Shown one piece after another: positions 124 to 19,446 of a stretch of 32,903 nt of DNA. Each line of letters begins with the position of its first letter. The first letter of the stretch is position 1. Source of the stretch: Guillardia theta CCMP2712 (taxonomy: Eukaryota; Protista; Cryptophyta); contig NW_005434496.1 in assembly GCF_000315625.1 (NCBI RefSeq), forward strand, positions 1 through 32,903, read 5' to 3'. Under the pieces are notes generated by a model. The model was not told the origin of the DNA, made no database searches, and worked only from the letters and a program-made list of their open reading frames with translations. The translations under genes and the position numbers were made by a program.

Positions 124-1114
124 CACATCTTTCATGATCTCAACTGCTGCAACGATAGGATTCTTGATCCCTGGGGCTGCTCCAACCTTGACAGGAGTCA
201 CTTCCTCCCTCTACCCTCCTCCCTCCCTCACCGCTCCGAAACCTCCCAGCCCTCCCTCCATCACGCTCGCATCGCATTCAACGAAACCGTCGATGTTCAA
301 GTTCGATCCAAAACCTGACGAGGAGTGAGAGAGAAGAAGACAGGATCTCAAGCTTTCAGACCCGCGTTGGTACAGTTGTCGTCCTCCATCACCTGATCGA
401 ACCTCCAAGTTACCGACACGAGTAAGAACGGCAGTCCTTGCCTTGATGGCTTCTTTCACAGCTTCAACAGCATCCGAGCCGTTGCGGAGGAGAAGAGCTG
501 AGCATGCATGTAAGCTTCGCACTGCCTCCCTCCGCATGCGAACCCGCTCGGCTGCATGCTAGAGCGAGCGATTTCTGGTAACGCAGCACGTGTCTGCCAG
601 CACAAACATCAGGACACGACCCTCCATCCGGCTGATCGAGCGCTTGCTCTCACTTCTGTGACATGTAGCCCTGCGCTGCTCCTCCATGAAGCGCGATGAA
701 CCAGTGAGCCCGTCTCTGCAACCCACATCACGGATGAACGTCCTTCCCAAAATGACCATACGGGATCATCATTCAGCACTCGTTGCCCTCTGTCTTCCTG
801 TGCTGTCTTCGTACCGTTCTGATGTCATCGCAGCTCAGTCAGCTGAGGATGAGAAGCACAAGAGACAAGGAGTGGAAGAGGTGAGGAAGAGGCAGGCGAT
901 AGTTCAAACTTGCCTGATACAGTCCATGGGGGTTGTTTGCGTCCTCTGTCCTCCCTCCCTCCCTCATTTTGTCGCAGTCAGCGTAGCCTCCTCCTCTCCT
1001 GATGCTGTCTTGCTCCGTCTGTGGTCGCTGAACCTCCTCCCCTCCCTCCCCTCCCTCCTCCACCCCCTCCTCCTCCCCCTCCTCCTCCCTTCTCCGCTTC
1101 ATCGGTCGCAACAT
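1..1114 (-). CDS. TASP1: Threonine aspartase 1 (taspase-1; type 2 asparaginase/Ntn-hydrolase family), 5' part; gene continues beyond the left edge
   Basis: Manual splicing (introns 819-913, 716-761, 594-653, 498-543, 393-441, ~317-361, ~187-231) gives a continuous frame: ...RRAHWFIALHGGAAQGYMSQKHVLRYQKSLALACSRAALLLRNGSDAVEAVKEAIKVMEDDNCTNAGFGSNLNIDGFVECDASVMEGGLGGFGAVGAAPGIKNPIVAAVEIMKD. HGGA, EDDxxxNAGxGSNLN and VECDASVM...GAVGA..GIKNP are asparaginase-2 motifs, and the GSNLN/VECDAS form is taspase-like. Start ATG at 1114 or 1102. Confidence 0.88.
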
Positions 1115-1116
1115 TG

Positions 1117-1210
1117 TAGTTGAAACTTTGAAAGTTTCGAGCCGTAAAGCCCCTGAAACTTTACTAGTTGAAACTTTGAAGAACTCCAAACTCCAAACCT
1201 TGAAACCTTC
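1117..1210. repeat. TGAAACTTT motif cluster including a perfect 16-bp direct repeat TAGTTGAAACTTTGAA (1117-1132 and 1165-1180)
   Basis: Read directly from the sequence; starts 3 bp upstream of the taspase ATG. Regulatory function is inferred only. Confidence 0.75.
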
Positions 1211-1284
1211 CCAAGATAACGGATTTTGTAACGAAAGTTTATCCGTTGCATCCAATGGATTTCCGTTGAGAGTGGATGGATCCT

Positions 1285-2035
1285 TGGGTACTTTCTTGCT
1301 TCACAAGGGGGTGGTCTCAGATATAAGGGGGTGGTGTGATTGGATGGCTGGAGCTCAATCAATTTGTGGTGCATGAAGGGGTACTTTTACCATGAAATCA
1401 ATTAGGAACGGATGGGTAACGGAAGTGTCAGCTTACTATTGGAGGGGTAGGGGTTACTTGACGGGGGGTACAGAACAAAGGTGGTAGGTGGGGGGTAAGG
1501 GGTGGTTGGCCCCAGAAGCGCCCCCAAGGAAAAAAAGCTCGTGCGATGGAATCACCACCCCATACCCTATGAAAATTAAGCTCAACTATCTAGATGCATT
1601 CATTTGAGTAAACTATGCGATGAGTATGGGGTAATTTTATTTAGTTATATTTAGTCAATAGTGAGTGAAGTTTTCCAACCACCCCTCAACACGCCTAAAG
1701 GAGAGTTTCAAATGTATGGGGTGGGTGTTGGAGGGTAGTCACCTGATGAATTGGGGGTAGGGGTGGTCTCTGAGATGCACATCTTGAGGGTGAGAGGGGG
1801 TAGGGGTGGTCAGTGGGTCCGTGATGGTCCTTTACGAGCCTTTCTTATTAGGAAAGGGTAGAGGTGAATGGTTGGAAAAAGTAGGGTAGGGGTAGTATCT
1901 AATTTCGGGGTGAATTTCAATCAGTGGGGTAGTTTTGTAGGAAATGATAGGGTGATATCTGAGGGGGTAGGGTGGGAAATGGGAGGGTGCGGGTACTGGG
2001 TGATAATATGGGGGTGGGGTAGTCATTGTGGTAGC
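1285..2035 (+). repeat. Strand-biased cluster of GGGGT(A/G) motifs with unique spacers (island A); G-quadruplex potential
   Basis: About 30 GGG(G)TA/GGG(G)TG words, nearly all G-rich on the + strand, e.g. GGGGGTAGGGGTGGTC at ~1753 and ~1796. Confidence 0.75.
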
Positions 2036-2991
2036 GGTGGCCGCCTGTTCGTCGGCCTCCGCTGGGGGAAAAAAGAGAAAAAAAAGCACACAAGAGAAGA
2101 AGAAGAGAGGAGAAGAACAAGTACAGAAGGCAAAACAGATGAAAGATTTGGCGAGAAGGGATGGAGACATGAAGCTGAGACGTTTGGAACATGTATAGAA
2201 GAAGTTGTGAGAAGAAACCGTGTCATGGAGGAAAGTTGGAATGCAGGACAGCATGCGCTTGAAACTGTGAAAAAGAGATGAACACCTCAAAGGACCGTTC
2301 CAACAGGAAATTTGGAAGAAATGGGACTTGGACAGATCAAGACATTGATTCCTCTTTCTTGACCTTCTTCTCGCTCAAGAACGAAAGCTTGCTTTGCATG
2401 CAGCTTGTCAGTCAGTAAAGGGGGGAAAGGTGTAGGATGTGAACAGGAGAGCAGAAAGGGGGTGACAAACAAAAGATGAGACTATGCATGAGAAACTGAT
2501 GAGACGTTTGATGGCATCGCATGATGACTTCCCTCACTTTTTACTGCGTTTGACATTTGTGGACAAAGTGGTAGTTTTGATAGAATATCGTTGTAGACCG
2601 AGAAGAATGTTGCGGTAGTTATGAGCAGCAGGTGTCTTATATGACTTGGAAGTATTGAGAAAGAATTTTTCAAGCTTTGGGATGAGTTGCTGAACAGAAG
2701 AGAAGTAGAGAGATGGAGCACCGTTCTTACTGAAATGAAGCGAACCTCACAACGCTTTCATCATGTTTGCTGAGCGGATTGCGATCATATTCTATATAAG
2801 TGTAGGCAGAGTGTTTTCTCTGATATGATTGGAGAAACCCTGTTTTTAGTAGCTCAAGTATGCGTTCTCAATCTGCTCTGTTTTAGATGTTATGAAACAT
2901 GTAGCAGTAGCAGTTGTTGCTTTAGATCGACTAGTTGTTCAACCTGATCTTTTCCATTGCTACTCAGTGTTCTCACTCGTTCTCTCTCAGG

Positions 2992-4857
<1,866 letters not shown>

Positions 4858-16781: not shown

Positions 16782-17039
16782 AGCGGCGATGCCTGTTATC
16801 GGCTCAATTGGAGAGTAAGGGGAAATCGCATGAAACTTTTGATCCCTGGATTCACAAACAAGTCAGGACTCTCCAGCAGGTTAGGTCAGGTGAGAAAACT
16901 TCATGGAAAGGGAGCAGAGAACAATGGGAAAGCAACAGTGAAGAGATGGAATGAGAAAATAAGAAAACACGAGGTACGGAAAACTCAAAAACGTGAAAGA
17001 ATCTGAACGATGTCCGTTGGGTGGGAGGGCAGTGGCAGA

Positions 17040-17395
17040 AGGAAAGGAGAAGATGAGAGGACGAGAGGAGAGAACAGAAGAAAGAGAGGAGGAGAGGAGA
17101 GGAGAGGAGACGAGAAGAGAGGAAAGGAGAGAAGAGGAGGAGGAGAAGAGGAAAGGAGAGGAGGAGAGGAGGACGACAAGGAGGACGACGAAGAGGACAA
17201 AAAGGACGAGGACGATGAGGTGGAGGTGGAGGTTAACAAGGAGGACGAGGAGCAAGAGGAGGAGCAGGATCAGGAACAGGAACAGGAGGAGGAGGTGAAC
17301 GAGGAGGAGGAGGTGGTGGTGAACGACGACGACGACGACGAGGAGGAGGAGGAGGAGGAGGAGGAGGAGGAGGAGGAGGAGCAGGAGCAGGAGGT

Positions 17396-17430
<35 letters not shown>

Positions 17431-17468
17431 GGCAGGGGCAGGGGCAGGGGCAGGAGCAGGAGCAGGAG
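17040..17468. repeat. Compound purine microsatellite tract: (GAGAG)n, (GAG)n, (GAC)n, (GAGCAG)n
   Basis: Read directly from the sequence; upstream of the VPS10 ATG. Confidence 0.9.
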
Positions 17469-17639
17469 TGTTGGGAGTGTTGGGGCGGGAGGGGATGCCA
17501 GCCATTGAGCTGATGACCAAGAGAACAAAGAGAACCAACAATCACTCAACTCTCATGAAATAAACTCTTCGAGCTCGCCTCATGATAAGAGATAGGGGCT
17601 TTGAAAGGACATCGGGCTCGACAGTGACTGTTGCCCTTG

Positions 17640-18460
17640 TTTAGGTCACCGGGTCACCGGGTGGTTAGCTCAGACGGAGCCTCGGCCGACTGCCAAGTTC
17701 GGAGTCCGATCGGATCAGATGATCCAGGGCCAGTGCGCGGCCGGGGCACCGCTGGGCCCGGACTCGCCGGGACCAGATAACCGTTAGGGCCGCCGGGCCG
17801 CCGGACCGTCAACTTGGCAGGCCGGGCTGAGTCCCGGGCCCGGGCCGGTCGGCCCGGCGGCCAGCCTCAATTTGAGTCCGTCCCGGGCGGACGTCGCCCG
17901 GATGCCAGCCTGCCTGCGTCTGAACTTCCGGCGGAAGTTGACATATGATTTCACTTTGTTAACTTCGAGTAAACTGACTGCCAGGGCTACTGAGTTTTAC
18001 TTAACTTTGAGTAAACGTACGGTAGTTCCTGTAACGCGGGGGACCCTGACCTAACTAATAGGTACACTTCAAGAATCCACCATTACCATACTCTTTACTC
18101 AAAGTTACGTGAAAAATCAGTACTACCAATCATTTTCTTTACTCAAAGTTAAGTTAAAGATCAGTACGAATAATGCACGGTACCATCTAGTACTGAGTAC
18201 GGTAGCCACCGGGTCCCCCTCCCGGCCCCCGGCCCCCGGTACTACCAGGAATTAACTTTCAACTTATAATGGCCAAGTGACTTGCGGCCCTTCAGTATCA
18301 GCGGGCCGGGGCCCCGGGTCGGAGTTTATTGAATGTTCCGCCGGGGCTCCGTCCCACGTGACTTCTGCGCCGTGACTGCCCTGAAGTGGTCGGACAGTAG
18401 TATGCGAAGGAGTCACGGGAAGGTACGAAGGGCCACGGTTTCGCAGCCTTGGTGGTCAGA
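17640..18460. repeat. GC/CCGG-rich palindromic island with an internal AT-richer inverted-repeat array (MITE/foldback-like or regulatory)
   Basis: Inverted pairs CTGCCAAGTT/AACTTGGCAG (17690-17699 and 17811-17820), AACTTCCG-G-CGGAAGTT (17923-17939), and ACTTAACTTTGAGTAAA/TTTACTCAAAGTTAAGT (17999-18015 and 18138-18154). Confidence 0.7.
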
Positions 18461-18660: not shown

Positions 18661-19446
18661 ATGTCCTTGTTGACAGGTCTTCACGTCCGCCGCCCCTCCT
18701 CCCTCCTCCCCTTCCCCGCTGCCCGCCGCGCCCGACTCACTCCTCCTCAGCGTGCCGCCATCGTCATGATGGACTCTATCAAGAACCCCCAAGAGCGCCT
18801 GACTCACTCTCAAATGGCTCACATGCTCGGCACGACCCGCTCAGCCATCTCCAAGACCCTCCGCCCGCAGTGTGTGGCGAGGATCCAAGCCATGTATCCG
18901 CAGCTCTTCACGACGAGCGGGGTGAAGGAGACGCACGAGTTCTTCGCCCTCCACTCCTCCCAGCAGACCTCGCAGCTTGACCCCGAGGCCTGCCGTGCTG
19001 GCTCGCAAGGGCCGCCGGAGCAGTCCCAGCCACAGCCCCAGCCCCAGCCCCAGCCCCAGCCCCAGCCCCAGGCCCAGGCCCAGCCCGCGTACAAGACGGT
19101 GGACTTCATGGTGTGCATGGCGGAGGGTGTCTGCGAGGGCGTGTCAGTACGGCTGGAGGTAGACGGGGAGGGGCGGGTGGTGAGGGGGCATGGGGCGCTG
19201 GTGAGGGCGCTGGTGGAGGAGTACGAGCTGGTGCTGGGGTGCTGCGAGGAGAGCGTGGTGGTGTCGTACGAGGACTCGGACGGAGATCGGGTGGAGATGA
19301 GGTCGGACGAGGACTTGGCACAGGCGATGGAGAGCTATCCTTTCGGGTACGTGAGGGTGTACGTGCAGGGGAGAGGGGGAGGGGGAGGGAGCTGCGGGGG
19401 CGGGGAATGGATCGTAGGGGAGCCTCCGGCTCCGACGCGAACGTGA
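18661..19446 (+). CDS. Intronless putative transcription factor: CENP-B/pogo(psq)-type HTH, (PQ)n linker, C-terminal PB1 domain
   Basis: 261-aa ORF with coding-like codon bias. RARLTPPQRAAIV...LTHSQMAHMLGTTRSAISKTLR fits the CENP-B N-terminal HTH pattern (RxxLTxx+RxxI...xxx+AxxxGxxRSxISKxL+). VVVSYEDSDGDRVEMRSDEDLAQAM...VRVYV is the PB1 OPCA motif. Confidence 0.82.
   Translation: MSLLTGLHVRRPSSLLPFPAARRARLTPPQRAAIVMMDSIKNPQERLTHSQMAHMLGTTRSAISKTLRPQCVARIQAMYPQLFTTSGVKETHEFFALHSSQQTSQLDPEACRAGSQGPPEQSQPQPQPQPQPQPQPQAQAQPAYKTVDFMVCMAEGVCEGVSVRLEVDGEGRVVRGHGALVRALVEEYELVLGCCEESVVVSYEDSDGDRVEMRSDEDLAQAMESYPFGYVRVYVQGRGGGGGSCGGGEWIVGEPPAPTRT

What the first reader, a model, noticed from the sequence alone, without database searches (positions are those of the whole stretch)
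18661..19446. CENP-B/pogo-type HTH fused to PB1: candidate new transcription-factor architecture
Seen: N-terminal HTH, a (PQ)n linker, and a C-terminal PB1 with an intact acidic OPCA motif (YEDSDGD...SDEDL); no DDE transposase domain. Established: PB1 mediates head-to-tail oligomerisation in plant ARF/Aux-IAA (B3-PB1) and NLP (RWP-RK-PB1) factors, and CENP-B-type HTHs derive from pogo transposases. Inference: a domesticated transposase DNA-binding domain convergently coupled to PB1. The basic beta-1 Lys is not clearly present, so it may need a partner PB1 protein. An oligomerising factor would suit the homotypic motif arrays seen in this window.
Basis: partly seen in the sequence, partly recalled or inferred. 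Interest (0 to 1): 0.75.

Follow-up and report, generated by a model that had tools for sequence, protein, structure and literature searches.

The report
Transposon-derived DNA-binder fused to PB1
A small single-copy gene of the alga Guillardia theta joins a DNA-binding helix-turn-helix inherited from pogo transposons to a PB1 protein-pairing domain; it belongs to an unnamed family seen so far only in cryptophyte algae, which may form a transcription-factor network wired like the plant auxin factors.

Summary
Window 18661-19446 (+) is an intact 261-aa ORF with an N-terminal helix-turn-helix (aa 21-82), a disordered linker with a (PQ)n run, and a C-terminal PB1 (aa 143-237). PB1 passes Pfam's threshold and has a complete OPCA motif. 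There is no DDE domain.

The "CENP-B/pogo-type" call for the HTH fails a direct Pfam test on this protein. It is supported transitively, by paralogues carrying CENP-B_N + Tc5 HTH + PB1 all above threshold, by an hhalign match to this genome's own pogo DDE gene, and by CENP-B as the top structural neighbour.

The gene is not a one-off. G. theta has 8 HTH(+/-Tc5)-PB1 loci, half of its 16 detectable PB1 loci, and at least 107 loci with this HTH. Unnamed relatives occur in Hanusia, Rhodomonas, Teleaulax and environmental data. No paper found describes the fusion.

The window copy is a derived member. It has lost the second HTH, and its canonical PB1 lysine is Met150, so it probably pairs with lysine-bearing paralogues rather than self-polymerising. 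It evolves fast but keeps the conserved core. Expression is unverified.

The scan flagged this family before on other DNA of this genome (s1-437291, s1-443937).

The parts
18661..19446 (+). Complete single-exon ORF, 261 aa plus stop. Single copy in the genome.
   Evidence: GC3 is 0.84 against GC2 0.49, with flanks at about 0.51 GC.
18661..18720 (+). Short N-terminal leader (aa 1-20), disordered. Met1 aligns with an internal Met of the closest relatives ('YAMSL..GL'), so this copy lacks their ~85-aa non-conserved leader.
   Evidence: Alignment; pLDDT about 42.
18721..18906 (+). HTH1 (aa 21-82), a CENP-B_N/psq-like helix-turn-helix. Recognition-helix block T59-R-S-A-I-S-K-T-L-R-P69.
   Evidence: Helices 28-38, 49-56, 60-66 and 69-78 at pLDDT above 90. 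39% identical to HTH1 of L006 (E 8e-10). Profile against the pogo gene's HTH: 85%, E 6e-6. VIA top hit is CENP-B 1hlv at Z 5.8. The direct Pfam CENP-B_N test was negative.
18907..19086 (+). Disordered linker (aa 83-142) in the place where relatives carry the Tc5-type second HTH. Includes the (PQ)n/(AQ) run at aa 121-141 (nt 19021-19083).
   Evidence: pLDDT 46-65. 12-nt repeat family D3. No HTH_Tnp_Tc5 hit, against 22 of 57 relatives that have one.
19087..19371 (+). PB1 domain (aa 143-237), beta-grasp fold.
   Evidence: Pfam 31.8 bits against 23.6. AF2 strands 143-152, 158-167, 199-204, 210-213 and 231-237, helices 176-192 and 216-225. Foldseek hits to p62, PKCiota-Par6 and NBR1 PB1.
19108..19110 (+). 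Met150 codon, in the column of the canonical beta1 Lys ('FKVSL' in Lys-bearing relatives). Leu in L002 and Hanusia P0004, Asn in P0005.
   Evidence: Consistent in MAFFT and BLASTP alignments.
19267..19317 (+). OPCA acidic motif, Y203-E-D-S-D-G-D-R-V-E-M-R-S-D-E-D-L219, intact.
   Evidence: Read directly from the sequence. Y, D, D, D, D and L are invariant across this genome's PB1 paralogues. Aligns to the p62 OPCA motif.
19372..19443 (+). Gly-rich disordered C-terminal tail (aa 238-261). Relatives also end shortly after the last PB1 strand.
   Evidence: pLDDT below 50; alignment.

Best explanation
This is a genuine, single-copy, selectively constrained gene of Guillardia theta. It encodes a derived member of a family known so far only from cryptophytes. 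In that family the bipartite DNA-binding domain of a pogo-type transposase (a CENP-B_N/psq-like HTH plus a Tc5/CENPB-type HTH) has lost the DDE catalytic domain and is joined through a disordered linker to a C-terminal PB1 domain.

The window copy belongs to a subclade (with G. theta L002 and two Hanusia phi proteins) that has also lost the second HTH and the canonical beta1 lysine of PB1, while keeping a complete acidic OPCA motif. That makes it a type-A (acidic-only) PB1.

Most likely mechanism (inferred, not shown). HTH1 contacts DNA. The OPCA face docks onto the basic face of a lysine-bearing PB1, for which the HTH-Tc5-PB1 paralogues, L009 and L003 are candidates in this genome. The protein would then act as a heterodimer partner or chain-capping modulator of a PB1-wired set of DNA-binding proteins, much as Aux/IAA modulates ARF, rather than as a self-polymerising factor.

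Shown: the domain identities, the family, its distribution, constraint on the sequence and the absence of the Lys. Inferred: DNA binding, nuclear role, partner choice and regulatory output.
For: Domains: PB1 is above Pfam's threshold and its fold matches solved PB1 domains. The HTH is modelled at pLDDT above 90.

Pogo link: L006 passes thresholds for CENP-B_N (25.0 against 21.2), HTH_Tnp_Tc5 (39.7 against 22.2) and PB1 (28.1 against 23.6). The window's HTH is 39% identical to L006's (E 8e-10). Five of 7 paralogue HTH blocks hit CENP-B_N (best E 3.9e-7). The HTH profile matches the HTH of G. theta's own CENP-B_N-like + Tc5 + DDE_1 gene (85%, E 6e-6). The top VIA neighbours are CENP-B 1hlv (Z 5.8), Tc3 transposase (5.7) and Brinker (5.5).

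Family: 8 of 16 PB1 loci in the genome sit directly downstream of this HTH in one open frame. The exhaustive HMMER search gives 124 hits (29 at E <= 1e-10), many spanning HTH, Tc5 and PB1. Every species-named source is a cryptophyte: Hanusia, Rhodomonas, Teleaulax, Guillardia. Several come from transcriptomes.

Placement: the clade with L002 and the Hanusia proteins has 98/97 support.

Constraint: 19 of 29 conserved columns are kept against 12 of 91 variable ones, and GC3 is 0.84. L002 and its Hanusia orthologue are 58% identical.

PB1 type: Met150 sits in the Lys column in all alignments, while L006, L010, L011, L012, L009 and L003 keep the Lys.

Not a transposon copy: single copy, no terminal inverted repeats, no DDE on this contig.
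Against: No direct Pfam CENP-B_N or psq hit for this protein, and the HTH profile does not reach CENP-B in the PDB by sequence. The structural Z scores are weak and tied with other small HTH domains, and Foldseek gave nothing significant for the HTH alone.

No evidence of expression. The exact protein is absent from NCBI, UniRef, EukProt, MMETSP and Logan calls. No fragment above 50% identity exists among the exhaustive-search hits.

The branch is about 25 times longer than that of paralogue L002, and the composition deviates.

Loss of the second basic residue (Arg column = E159) depends on the alignment: BLASTP against L006 puts R164 next to that column. With a single HTH, sequence-specific DNA binding may be weak. 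Nothing tests DNA binding, localisation or PB1 pairing.
Confidence: 0.6

Rival explanations
1. A silent, young or decaying duplicate. The ORF is an intact but unexpressed paralogue of the L002-type gene, drifting under relaxed constraint, with no present function.
For: Terminal branch 2.04 against 0.079 for L002, with deviant composition. No public gene model, transcript or protein fragment. It lacks the N-terminal leader, the Tc5 HTH, the beta1 Lys and probably the beta2 Arg.
Against: With about 2 substitutions per site on its branch, the 261 codons still hold no stop or frameshift. Conserved columns are retained five times more often than variable ones (66% against 13%). GC3 0.84 against GC2 0.49 shows coding periodicity. 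The recognition helix and OPCA motif are nearly perfect.
Confidence: 0.15
2. Not a gene-specific transcription factor but an architectural chromatin or repeat-binding protein in the manner of CENP-B and fission-yeast Abp1/Cbh, which are also pogo-derived. PB1 contacts would bridge DNA-bound molecules at repeats, centromeres or transposon remnants.
For: The same domain evidence as the main explanation. The closest structural neighbour is CENP-B bound to its box. The recognition helix is almost invariant across at least 107 paralogous loci, which fits a common repeated target better than diversified promoter motifs. A dispersed 35-80 nt repeat lies 500 bp upstream.
Against: There is no link between the protein and any repeat. 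The window copy lacks the Lys needed for canonical PB1 chains. CENP-B dimerises through a different C-terminal domain (own knowledge). Nothing distinguishes this reading from the transcription-factor reading computationally.
Confidence: 0.15
3. A transposon-borne accessory gene, that is a 'PB1-pogo' element analogous to the plant PB1-MULEs, rather than a host gene.
For: Precedent: MULE transposons and the MUGB genes domesticated from them carry PB1 (PMC4948706). The HTH family is highly amplified in tandem and inverted arrays, and C146 holds near-identical duplicates.
Against: The window locus is single copy at the DNA level, with no flanking terminal inverted repeats. No DDE is adjacent, and only two DDE_1 loci exist in the genome, both elsewhere. 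Orthologues are conserved between Guillardia and Hanusia (58%) and transcribed in relatives. Amplification is local (segmental), not dispersed.
Confidence: 0.05
4. The N-terminal domain is a generic HTH, or one of bacterial type, that merely resembles CENP-B_N. The pogo ancestry would then be wrong for HTH1.
For: The window protein's best Pfam hits are HTH_Crp_2 (20.3 to 23.1 bits) and Sigma70_r4, all below threshold. The profile's best PDB sequence hits are archaeal and phage HTH proteins (E at least 0.0077). Structural Z scores of 4.5-5.8 are shared with many HTH classes.
Against: In 22 of 57 relatives HTH1 is followed at the canonical spacing by a Tc5 HTH above threshold, which is the diagnostic pogo/CENP-B bipartite layout. 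CENP-B_N is above threshold in L006. hhalign links HTH1 to this genome's own pogo gene. CENP-B and Tc3 rank first among 48,161 chains.
Confidence: 0.05

Closest known systems
Plant ARF / Aux-IAA (B3-PB1 and PB1-only) and NLP (RWP-RK-PB1) factors
   Same: A DNA-binding domain coupled by a linker to a C-terminal PB1, with front/back (Lys/OPCA) polarity that lets family members pair with one another. There are full members and reduced members that could act as modulators. PMC7051960 describes ARF, Aux/IAA and NLP among the PB1 families. NLP-type clusters appear among the structural neighbours.
   Different: The DNA-binding domain is unrelated: a pogo-derived HTH instead of B3 or RWP-RK. The lineage is different (cryptophytes). 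There is no degron or EAR motif. The window copy's PB1 is acidic-only. The resemblance is convergent, not membership.
MUSTANG-B (MUG7/MUG8) and PB1-MULE transposons of angiosperms
   Same: The only described case found of a transposase-derived protein carrying a PB1 domain (PMC4948706 and PMC8616336).
   Different: A different transposon superfamily (Mutator-like, not pogo/Tc1-mariner). MUG keeps the transposase core and has PB1 encoded in a short 5' exon. Here the catalytic domain is gone, only the HTH part remains, and PB1 is C-terminal.
CENP-B, Tigger/Jerky/TIGD and pogo transposases (CENP-B_N + HTH_Tnp_Tc5 + DDE_1)
   Same: The family's HTH1 + HTH2 layout matches the bipartite CENP-B/pogo DNA-binding domain. 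G. theta has two genes with the full CENP-B_N-like + Tc5 + DDE_1 layout. CENP-B is the top structural neighbour of the window's HTH.
   Different: No DDE domain. The window copy also lacks the Tc5 HTH. Its HTH1 has a 4-residue insertion between helices 1 and 2 relative to the pogo gene and does not reach the Pfam threshold itself.
BTB-psq proteins of insects (Pipsqueak, Bric-a-brac, Ribbon); from my own knowledge, not tested here
   Same: A pogo-derived psq/CENP-B_N-type HTH, without transposase, fused to a protein-protein oligomerisation domain to make a transcription or chromatin factor.
   Different: The oligomerisation module is an N-terminal BTB/POZ, not a C-terminal PB1. This is an animal lineage and an independent fusion.
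p62/SQSTM1, PKCiota-Par6 and NBR1 PB1 domains
   Same: Best structural and sequence matches of the C-terminal domain, with near-identical OPCA motifs.
   Different: Those are cytoplasmic scaffold or autophagy proteins with no DNA-binding domain. p62 has both Lys and OPCA and forms filaments, whereas the window PB1 lacks the Lys.

Membership tests
PB1 domain (PF00564) | Profile match above the curated threshold | tested here: met
   31.8 bits against 23.6, aa 173-236.
PB1 domain (PF00564) | Ubiquitin-like beta-grasp fold | tested here: met
   AF2 gives the order beta-beta-alpha-beta-beta-alpha-beta at block-mean pLDDT about 82-96. Foldseek top hits are all PB1: p62 6tgy E 7.7e-5, 1wmh, 1oey, 6tgs.
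PB1 type A (acidic) | OPCA motif YxDxDGDxxxxxSDxEL | tested here: met
   Y203EDSDGDRVEMRSDEDL219, aligned to the p62 OPCA motif.
PB1 type B / AB (basic) | Conserved Lys on strand beta1 | tested here: not met
   The column holds Met150, while L006, L009, L012 and L003 have Lys. The register was judged from sequence and turn spacing, not from a residue-level structural superposition.
CENP-B_N / psq-type HTH (PF04218; first HTH of pogo transposases) | Profile match above the curated threshold | tested here: not met
   No hit for the window protein. It is met by paralogue L006 (25.0 against 21.2), and 5 of 7 paralogue HTH blocks hit at E <= 1 (best 3.9e-7).
CENP-B_N / psq-type HTH | Homology to a genuine pogo transposase HTH, and a tri-helical fold like CENP-B domain 1 | tested here: inconclusive
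   hhalign against the G. theta pogo gene: 85%, E 6e-6. VIA rank 1 is CENP-B 1hlv at Z 5.8 over 60 residues, with Tc3 at 5.7. These Z scores are low and tied with other HTH classes, and Foldseek found nothing significant.
HTH_Tnp_Tc5 / 'HTH CENPB-type' (PF03221; second HTH) | Second HTH ending in the 'GW..RF..RH.L' motif | tested here: not met
   Absent from the window protein, where aa 83-142 are disordered. Present in 22 of 57 relatives.
pogo / Tc1-mariner DDE transposase (PF03184) | DDE_1 catalytic domain; terminal inverted repeats; multiple copies | tested here: not met
   No DDE in the ORF or on this contig. No TIRs, and the coding DNA is single copy.
ARF / Aux-IAA, NLP | B3 or RWP-RK DNA-binding domain; degron or EAR motifs | tested here: not met
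   No such Pfam hits. The similarity is in design only.
MUSTANG-B / PB1-MULE | MULE transposase core with an N-terminal PB1 | tested here: not met
   No MULE domain, and PB1 is C-terminal.
Sequence-specific transcription factor | DNA binding, nuclear localisation and an effect on transcription | not testable with these tools
   Needs DAP-seq or EMSA, localisation and perturbation experiments.

The most novel reading that the evidence does not exclude
Cryptophytes independently built a PB1-wired transcription-factor system out of a domesticated pogo DNA-binding domain. Two-HTH members with Lys + OPCA PB1 domains would form DNA-bound homo- or hetero-oligomers. One-HTH, Lys-less members such as this gene would act as polarity-restricted caps or antagonists. 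This would be a convergent counterpart of the ARF-Aux/IAA logic, accounting for half of the detectable PB1 loci in G. theta.
Probability: 0.3. Interest if true: 0.75.

Novelty: new variant of a known kind. Interest (0 to 1): 0.55.

Why it matters
Known PB1-coupled DNA-binding proteins are essentially a plant story (ARF, NLP). The one described transposase-PB1 combination I found is the plant MUGB/PB1-MULE case.

A second, independent fusion in a distant algal lineage would be useful for three reasons:
- It would be a clean example of convergent transcription-factor design: a DNA-binding module plus a polar oligomeriser.
- It would be a further case of transposase DNA-binding domains being recruited as host regulators.
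- It would give cryptophytes, whose transcription-factor repertoire is poorly characterised, a testable lineage-specific regulator family. That family has natural variants in HTH number and in Lys/OPCA status that predict who can bind whom.

The paralogues are deposited only as "hypothetical protein", and the window copy is not in the public protein sets searched, although the ESM Atlas holds its exact sequence.

Tried and rejected
- The whole-protein word search returned only a low-complexity artefact (P0001). The HTH-restricted word search found nothing. Both were uninformative, so I used the exhaustive HMMER search.
- The HTH profile against PDB sequences did not reach CENP-B. Foldseek on the HTH-only model gave no hit at E <= 1e-3. 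Only the VIA wide search ranked CENP-B and Tc3 first.
- Expression evidence: the exact-protein look-ups, the JGI contig scan and a BLAST of all 177 fetched proteins found neither this protein nor fragments of it.
- An upstream exon or longer N-terminus was considered because 'HHHIPQHCFHT' upstream of the ATG resembles the L002 start. I rejected it as unnecessary: there is no in-frame start upstream, Met1 aligns with a conserved internal Met, and the leader is not conserved in relatives.
- I first read D148 as replacing the beta1 Lys. On re-reading the alignments, the Lys column is M150, and D148 lies two residues earlier on the same face.
- Loss of the beta2 Arg (E159) holds in MAFFT and in BLASTP against L002, but shifts in BLASTP against L006, so I kept it as uncertain.
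- The transposon reading was tested through copy number and TIRs and rejected for this locus.
- Model coordinates are not exposed, so I could not check side-chain exposure or electrostatics.
Full report
**1. The observation**

Window 18661-19446 (+) is an ATG-initiated ORF of 261 codons inside a 286-codon open frame.

- PB1: Pfam finds it above the gathering score (31.8 against 23.6 bits, aa 173-236). Sequence search of the PDB hits the PB1 domains of MAP2K5 and p62.
- Whole-chain model: an AlphaFold2 model built on a 57-sequence family alignment (mean pLDDT 76.6) has two confident domains and a disordered linker. Helices lie at 28-38, 49-56, 60-66 and 69-78, with 10-residue block means of 91-97 over aa 31-80. 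A beta-grasp lies at 143-237.
- Fold match: Foldseek's top matches are all PB1 domains, namely the p62 filament 6tgy (E 7.7e-5), PKCiota/Par6 1wmh, p40/p67phox 1oey and NBR1 6tgs.
- OPCA: the acidic motif Y203-EDSDGDRVEMRSDED-L219 is complete. A profile of this genome's PB1 paralogues aligns it to the p62 motif (E 1.2e-6).
- Linker: the (PQ)n run is five 12-nt units at 19021-19092.
- No DDE: there is no DDE domain in the ORF. The only two DDE_1 loci in the 87-Mb genome lie on other contigs.

**2. Organism**

The assembly has 87.1 Mb in 669 contigs. Paralogous ORFs are letter-for-letter XP_005823821.1, XP_005821400.1, XP_005830906.1, XP_005841804.1 and XP_005841099.1 of Guillardia theta CCMP2712. 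This agrees with earlier notes.

**3. Is the HTH CENP-B/pogo-type?**

The direct test fails. The window protein gives only sub-threshold generic hits (HTH_Crp_2 20.3 bits, Sigma70_r4 15.5) and no CENP-B_N or psq hit. A seven-sequence HTH profile does not reach CENP-B in the PDB by sequence.

The indirect case is good:
- The genome holds paralogues whose first ~60 conserved residues align with the window's aa 21-82 (LT..Q...IV...Q.A..G.SRSAISKILRP). The window against L006 is 39% identical with E 8e-10.
- L006 (443 aa) passes Pfam thresholds for CENP-B_N (25.0 against 21.2), HTH_Tnp_Tc5 (39.7 against 22.2) and PB1 (28.1 against 23.6).
- Five of seven HTH blocks hit CENP-B_N, best E 3.9e-7.
- G. 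theta also has two long ORFs with Tc5 + DDE_1. The one scanned with Pfam, L015, reads CENP-B_N-like + Tc5 + DDE_1. hhalign matches the family HTH profile to the N-terminal HTH of that gene (85%, E 6e-6), with a 4-residue insertion in the family.
- An HTH-only model of the window protein (pLDDT 81) has, among 48,161 chains, CENP-B(1-129)/DNA as its best neighbour (Z 5.8, 60 residues, CENP-B domain 1). Tc3 transposase (5.7) and Brinker (5.5) follow. These Z values are low and tied, and Foldseek found nothing significant. The structure is therefore consistent with the assignment rather than decisive.

By PROSITE usage (my own knowledge), HTH1 is the psq-type domain and the Tc5 domain is the CENPB-type proper. 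The window protein keeps only the former.

**4. A family, not a singleton**

In this genome:
- The HTH profile hits at least 107 places, many in tandem or inverted arrays of 150-350-aa ORFs.
- Tc5 hits 26 places and PB1 hits 16.
- Eight PB1 loci lie directly downstream of this HTH in one open frame. Four have the Tc5 HTH (three on C146 and one on C2). Four lack it (C178, which is the window; two on C103; and C43).

Beyond this genome:
- An exhaustive HMMER search of 1.84 billion representatives, with an HTH...PB1 profile, gave 124 hits at E <= 1e-3 and 29 at E <= 1e-10. Many carry HTH + Tc5 + a long linker + PB1.
- Of a 57-member set, 29 pass PB1 and 22 pass Tc5 at E <= 1e-3.
- Every source that names a species is a cryptophyte: Hanusia phi, Rhodomonas salina, Teleaulax amphioxeia and G. 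theta. The rest are MMETSP transcripts, Logan RNA-run contigs and environmental assemblies, where the gene is a single uninterrupted ORF.
- None has a curated name. UniRef auto-labels them "PB1 domain-containing" or "HTH CENPB-type domain-containing".

**5. Place and state of the window copy**

A maximum-likelihood tree on HTH1 + PB1 places the window protein with L002 and two Hanusia proteins (98/97 support). This is a Tc5-less subclade. The window is colinear with L002 over 220 residues (32% identity, E 8e-33). L002 and its Hanusia orthologue are 58% identical.

The window's branch is about 25 times longer than L002's (2.04 against 0.079) and its composition deviates. Even so, it keeps 19 of 29 (23 of 29 counting similar residues) of the >=80%-conserved columns, against 12 of 91 variable ones. 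The ORF has GC3 0.84, GC2 0.49 and flanks at about 0.51 GC. That is the signature of a fast-evolving but constrained coding gene.

Its Met1 aligns with an internal Met of its relatives, so it merely lacks their non-conserved leader. The coding DNA is single copy, with no terminal inverted repeats.

**6. PB1 polarity**

In all alignments (MAFFT and BLASTP) the canonical beta1 Lys of the Lys-bearing relatives ('NFKVSL', 'KFKVAC', 'PLKATF') aligns with window Met150. That column is Leu in L002 and P0004 and Asn in P0005. An acidic residue (D148, or Glu in the relatives) sits two positions earlier.

The conserved beta2 Arg column is E159 in MAFFT and in BLASTP against L002. BLASTP against L006 shifts the register so that R164 lies beside it, so this second loss is less certain.

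With OPCA intact and the Lys absent, this is an acidic-only (type A) PB1. By established PB1 rules it should dock onto a basic-face PB1 and should not form head-to-tail homopolymers. Lys-bearing candidates in the same genome are L006, L010, L011, L012, L009 (the tandem neighbour of L002) and the repeat protein L003.

**7. What is known**

The main PB1 survey used all MMETSP transcriptomes. For Chromista and Cryptophyta it lists only kinase, NBR1, CBS, TPR and EF-hand partners (PMC7051960).

These full-text searches returned no paper: 'PB1 domain' + 'CENP-B'; 'HTH_Tnp_Tc5' + PB1; and Guillardia + CENPB. The search for pogo + domesticated + PB1 led to the one precedent of a transposase-derived PB1 protein I found. 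That precedent is the plant MUGB genes and PB1-MULE transposons, from a different transposon superfamily and with a different layout (PMC4948706 and PMC8616336).

The ESM Atlas holds this exact sequence. Its structural neighbours are PB1 proteins with CBS, ZZ, TFG, RWP-RK, TPR, NBR1, Bem1 or Cdc24 contexts, and none is an HTH-PB1 cluster.

**8. Weak points**

Expression of this copy is not shown.
- The exact protein is absent from the NCBI, UniRef, EukProt, MMETSP and Logan protein calls.
- No hit of the exhaustive search is more than 50% identical to it.

DNA binding, localisation and PB1 pairing are all inferred.

The array about 500 bp upstream is a dispersed short repeat with at least 44 other copies, and a Lys-less PB1 does not favour homo-oligomers.

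**9. Verdict**

This is a truncated, acidic-only member of an undescribed cryptophyte family of pogo-derived HTH-PB1 proteins, not a unique architecture.

The scan had already flagged the family on other DNA of this genome (s1-437291, s1-443937). My genome-wide scans agree with those notes.

Noticed in passing
window 18091-18176 (also 17995-18015): The 'TTTACTCAAAGTTA...ATCAGTAC' units about 500 bp upstream of the gene belong to a dispersed short repeat. At least 44 other sites on many contigs match, many of them 100% identical over 35 nt. It is therefore not a locus-specific motif array.
   Followed up: partly
G000 contigs C167, C23, C30, C19, C312, C82, C221, C317 (loci L024-L029): At least 107 loci carry the same HTH, mostly as 150-350-aa ORFs in tandem or inverted arrays with near-identical copies. 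Each has a disordered N-terminus, then a conserved motif, then HTH1, with or without the Tc5 HTH.
   Followed up: partly
L004, L005, L009, L013, L025-L028 and most non-Guillardia relatives (P0006-P0020), just upstream of HTH1: A conserved motif R-x-W-(T/S)-x2-E-(R/K)-x2-H-x3-C-x-G-K precedes HTH1 in most family members. It is absent from the window/L002/Hanusia subclade, and its role is unknown.
   Followed up: no
L014 (G000:C16, ORF 915-2606, minus strand) and L015 (G000:C3, ORF 1253-3016, plus strand): These are the only two DDE_1 loci in the genome. Both are intact ORFs of 563 and 588 aa with a Tc5 HTH + DDE_1, and L015 also has a CENP-B_N-like first HTH. Each is apparently single copy, so they are either rare autonomous pogo elements or domesticated transposases.
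   Followed up: partly
L010 and L011 (G000:C146 at about 80 kb and 107 kb) and L006 (about 117 kb): Three HTH-Tc5-PB1 genes lie on one scaffold. Two of them are near-identical 395-aa copies about 26 kb apart, which points to a recent segmental duplication.
   Followed up: no
L032 (G000:C65, 1011-1667 plus strand and 2838-3209 minus strand): An inverted pair of open frames ends in family-like OPCA halves ('LTYIDEDNDEILVTSDHELAVAIRH'). No HTH was detected in the same frame, so these are possibly spliced or truncated relatives.
   Followed up: no
window 17010-17550: A purine-rich microsatellite-like block (12-nt and GA-rich repeat families D1 and D2) gives long artefactual Glu/Asp-rich and Leu/Pro-rich ORFs on both strands, just upstream of the gene's 5' region.
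   Followed up: no
P0012 (environmental relative): Its OPCA region is split by a stretch of about 40 residues ('YK...VTPPTHH...VQDEDGDD'). This is probably an unspliced intron or an assembly artefact in that contig.
   Followed up: no
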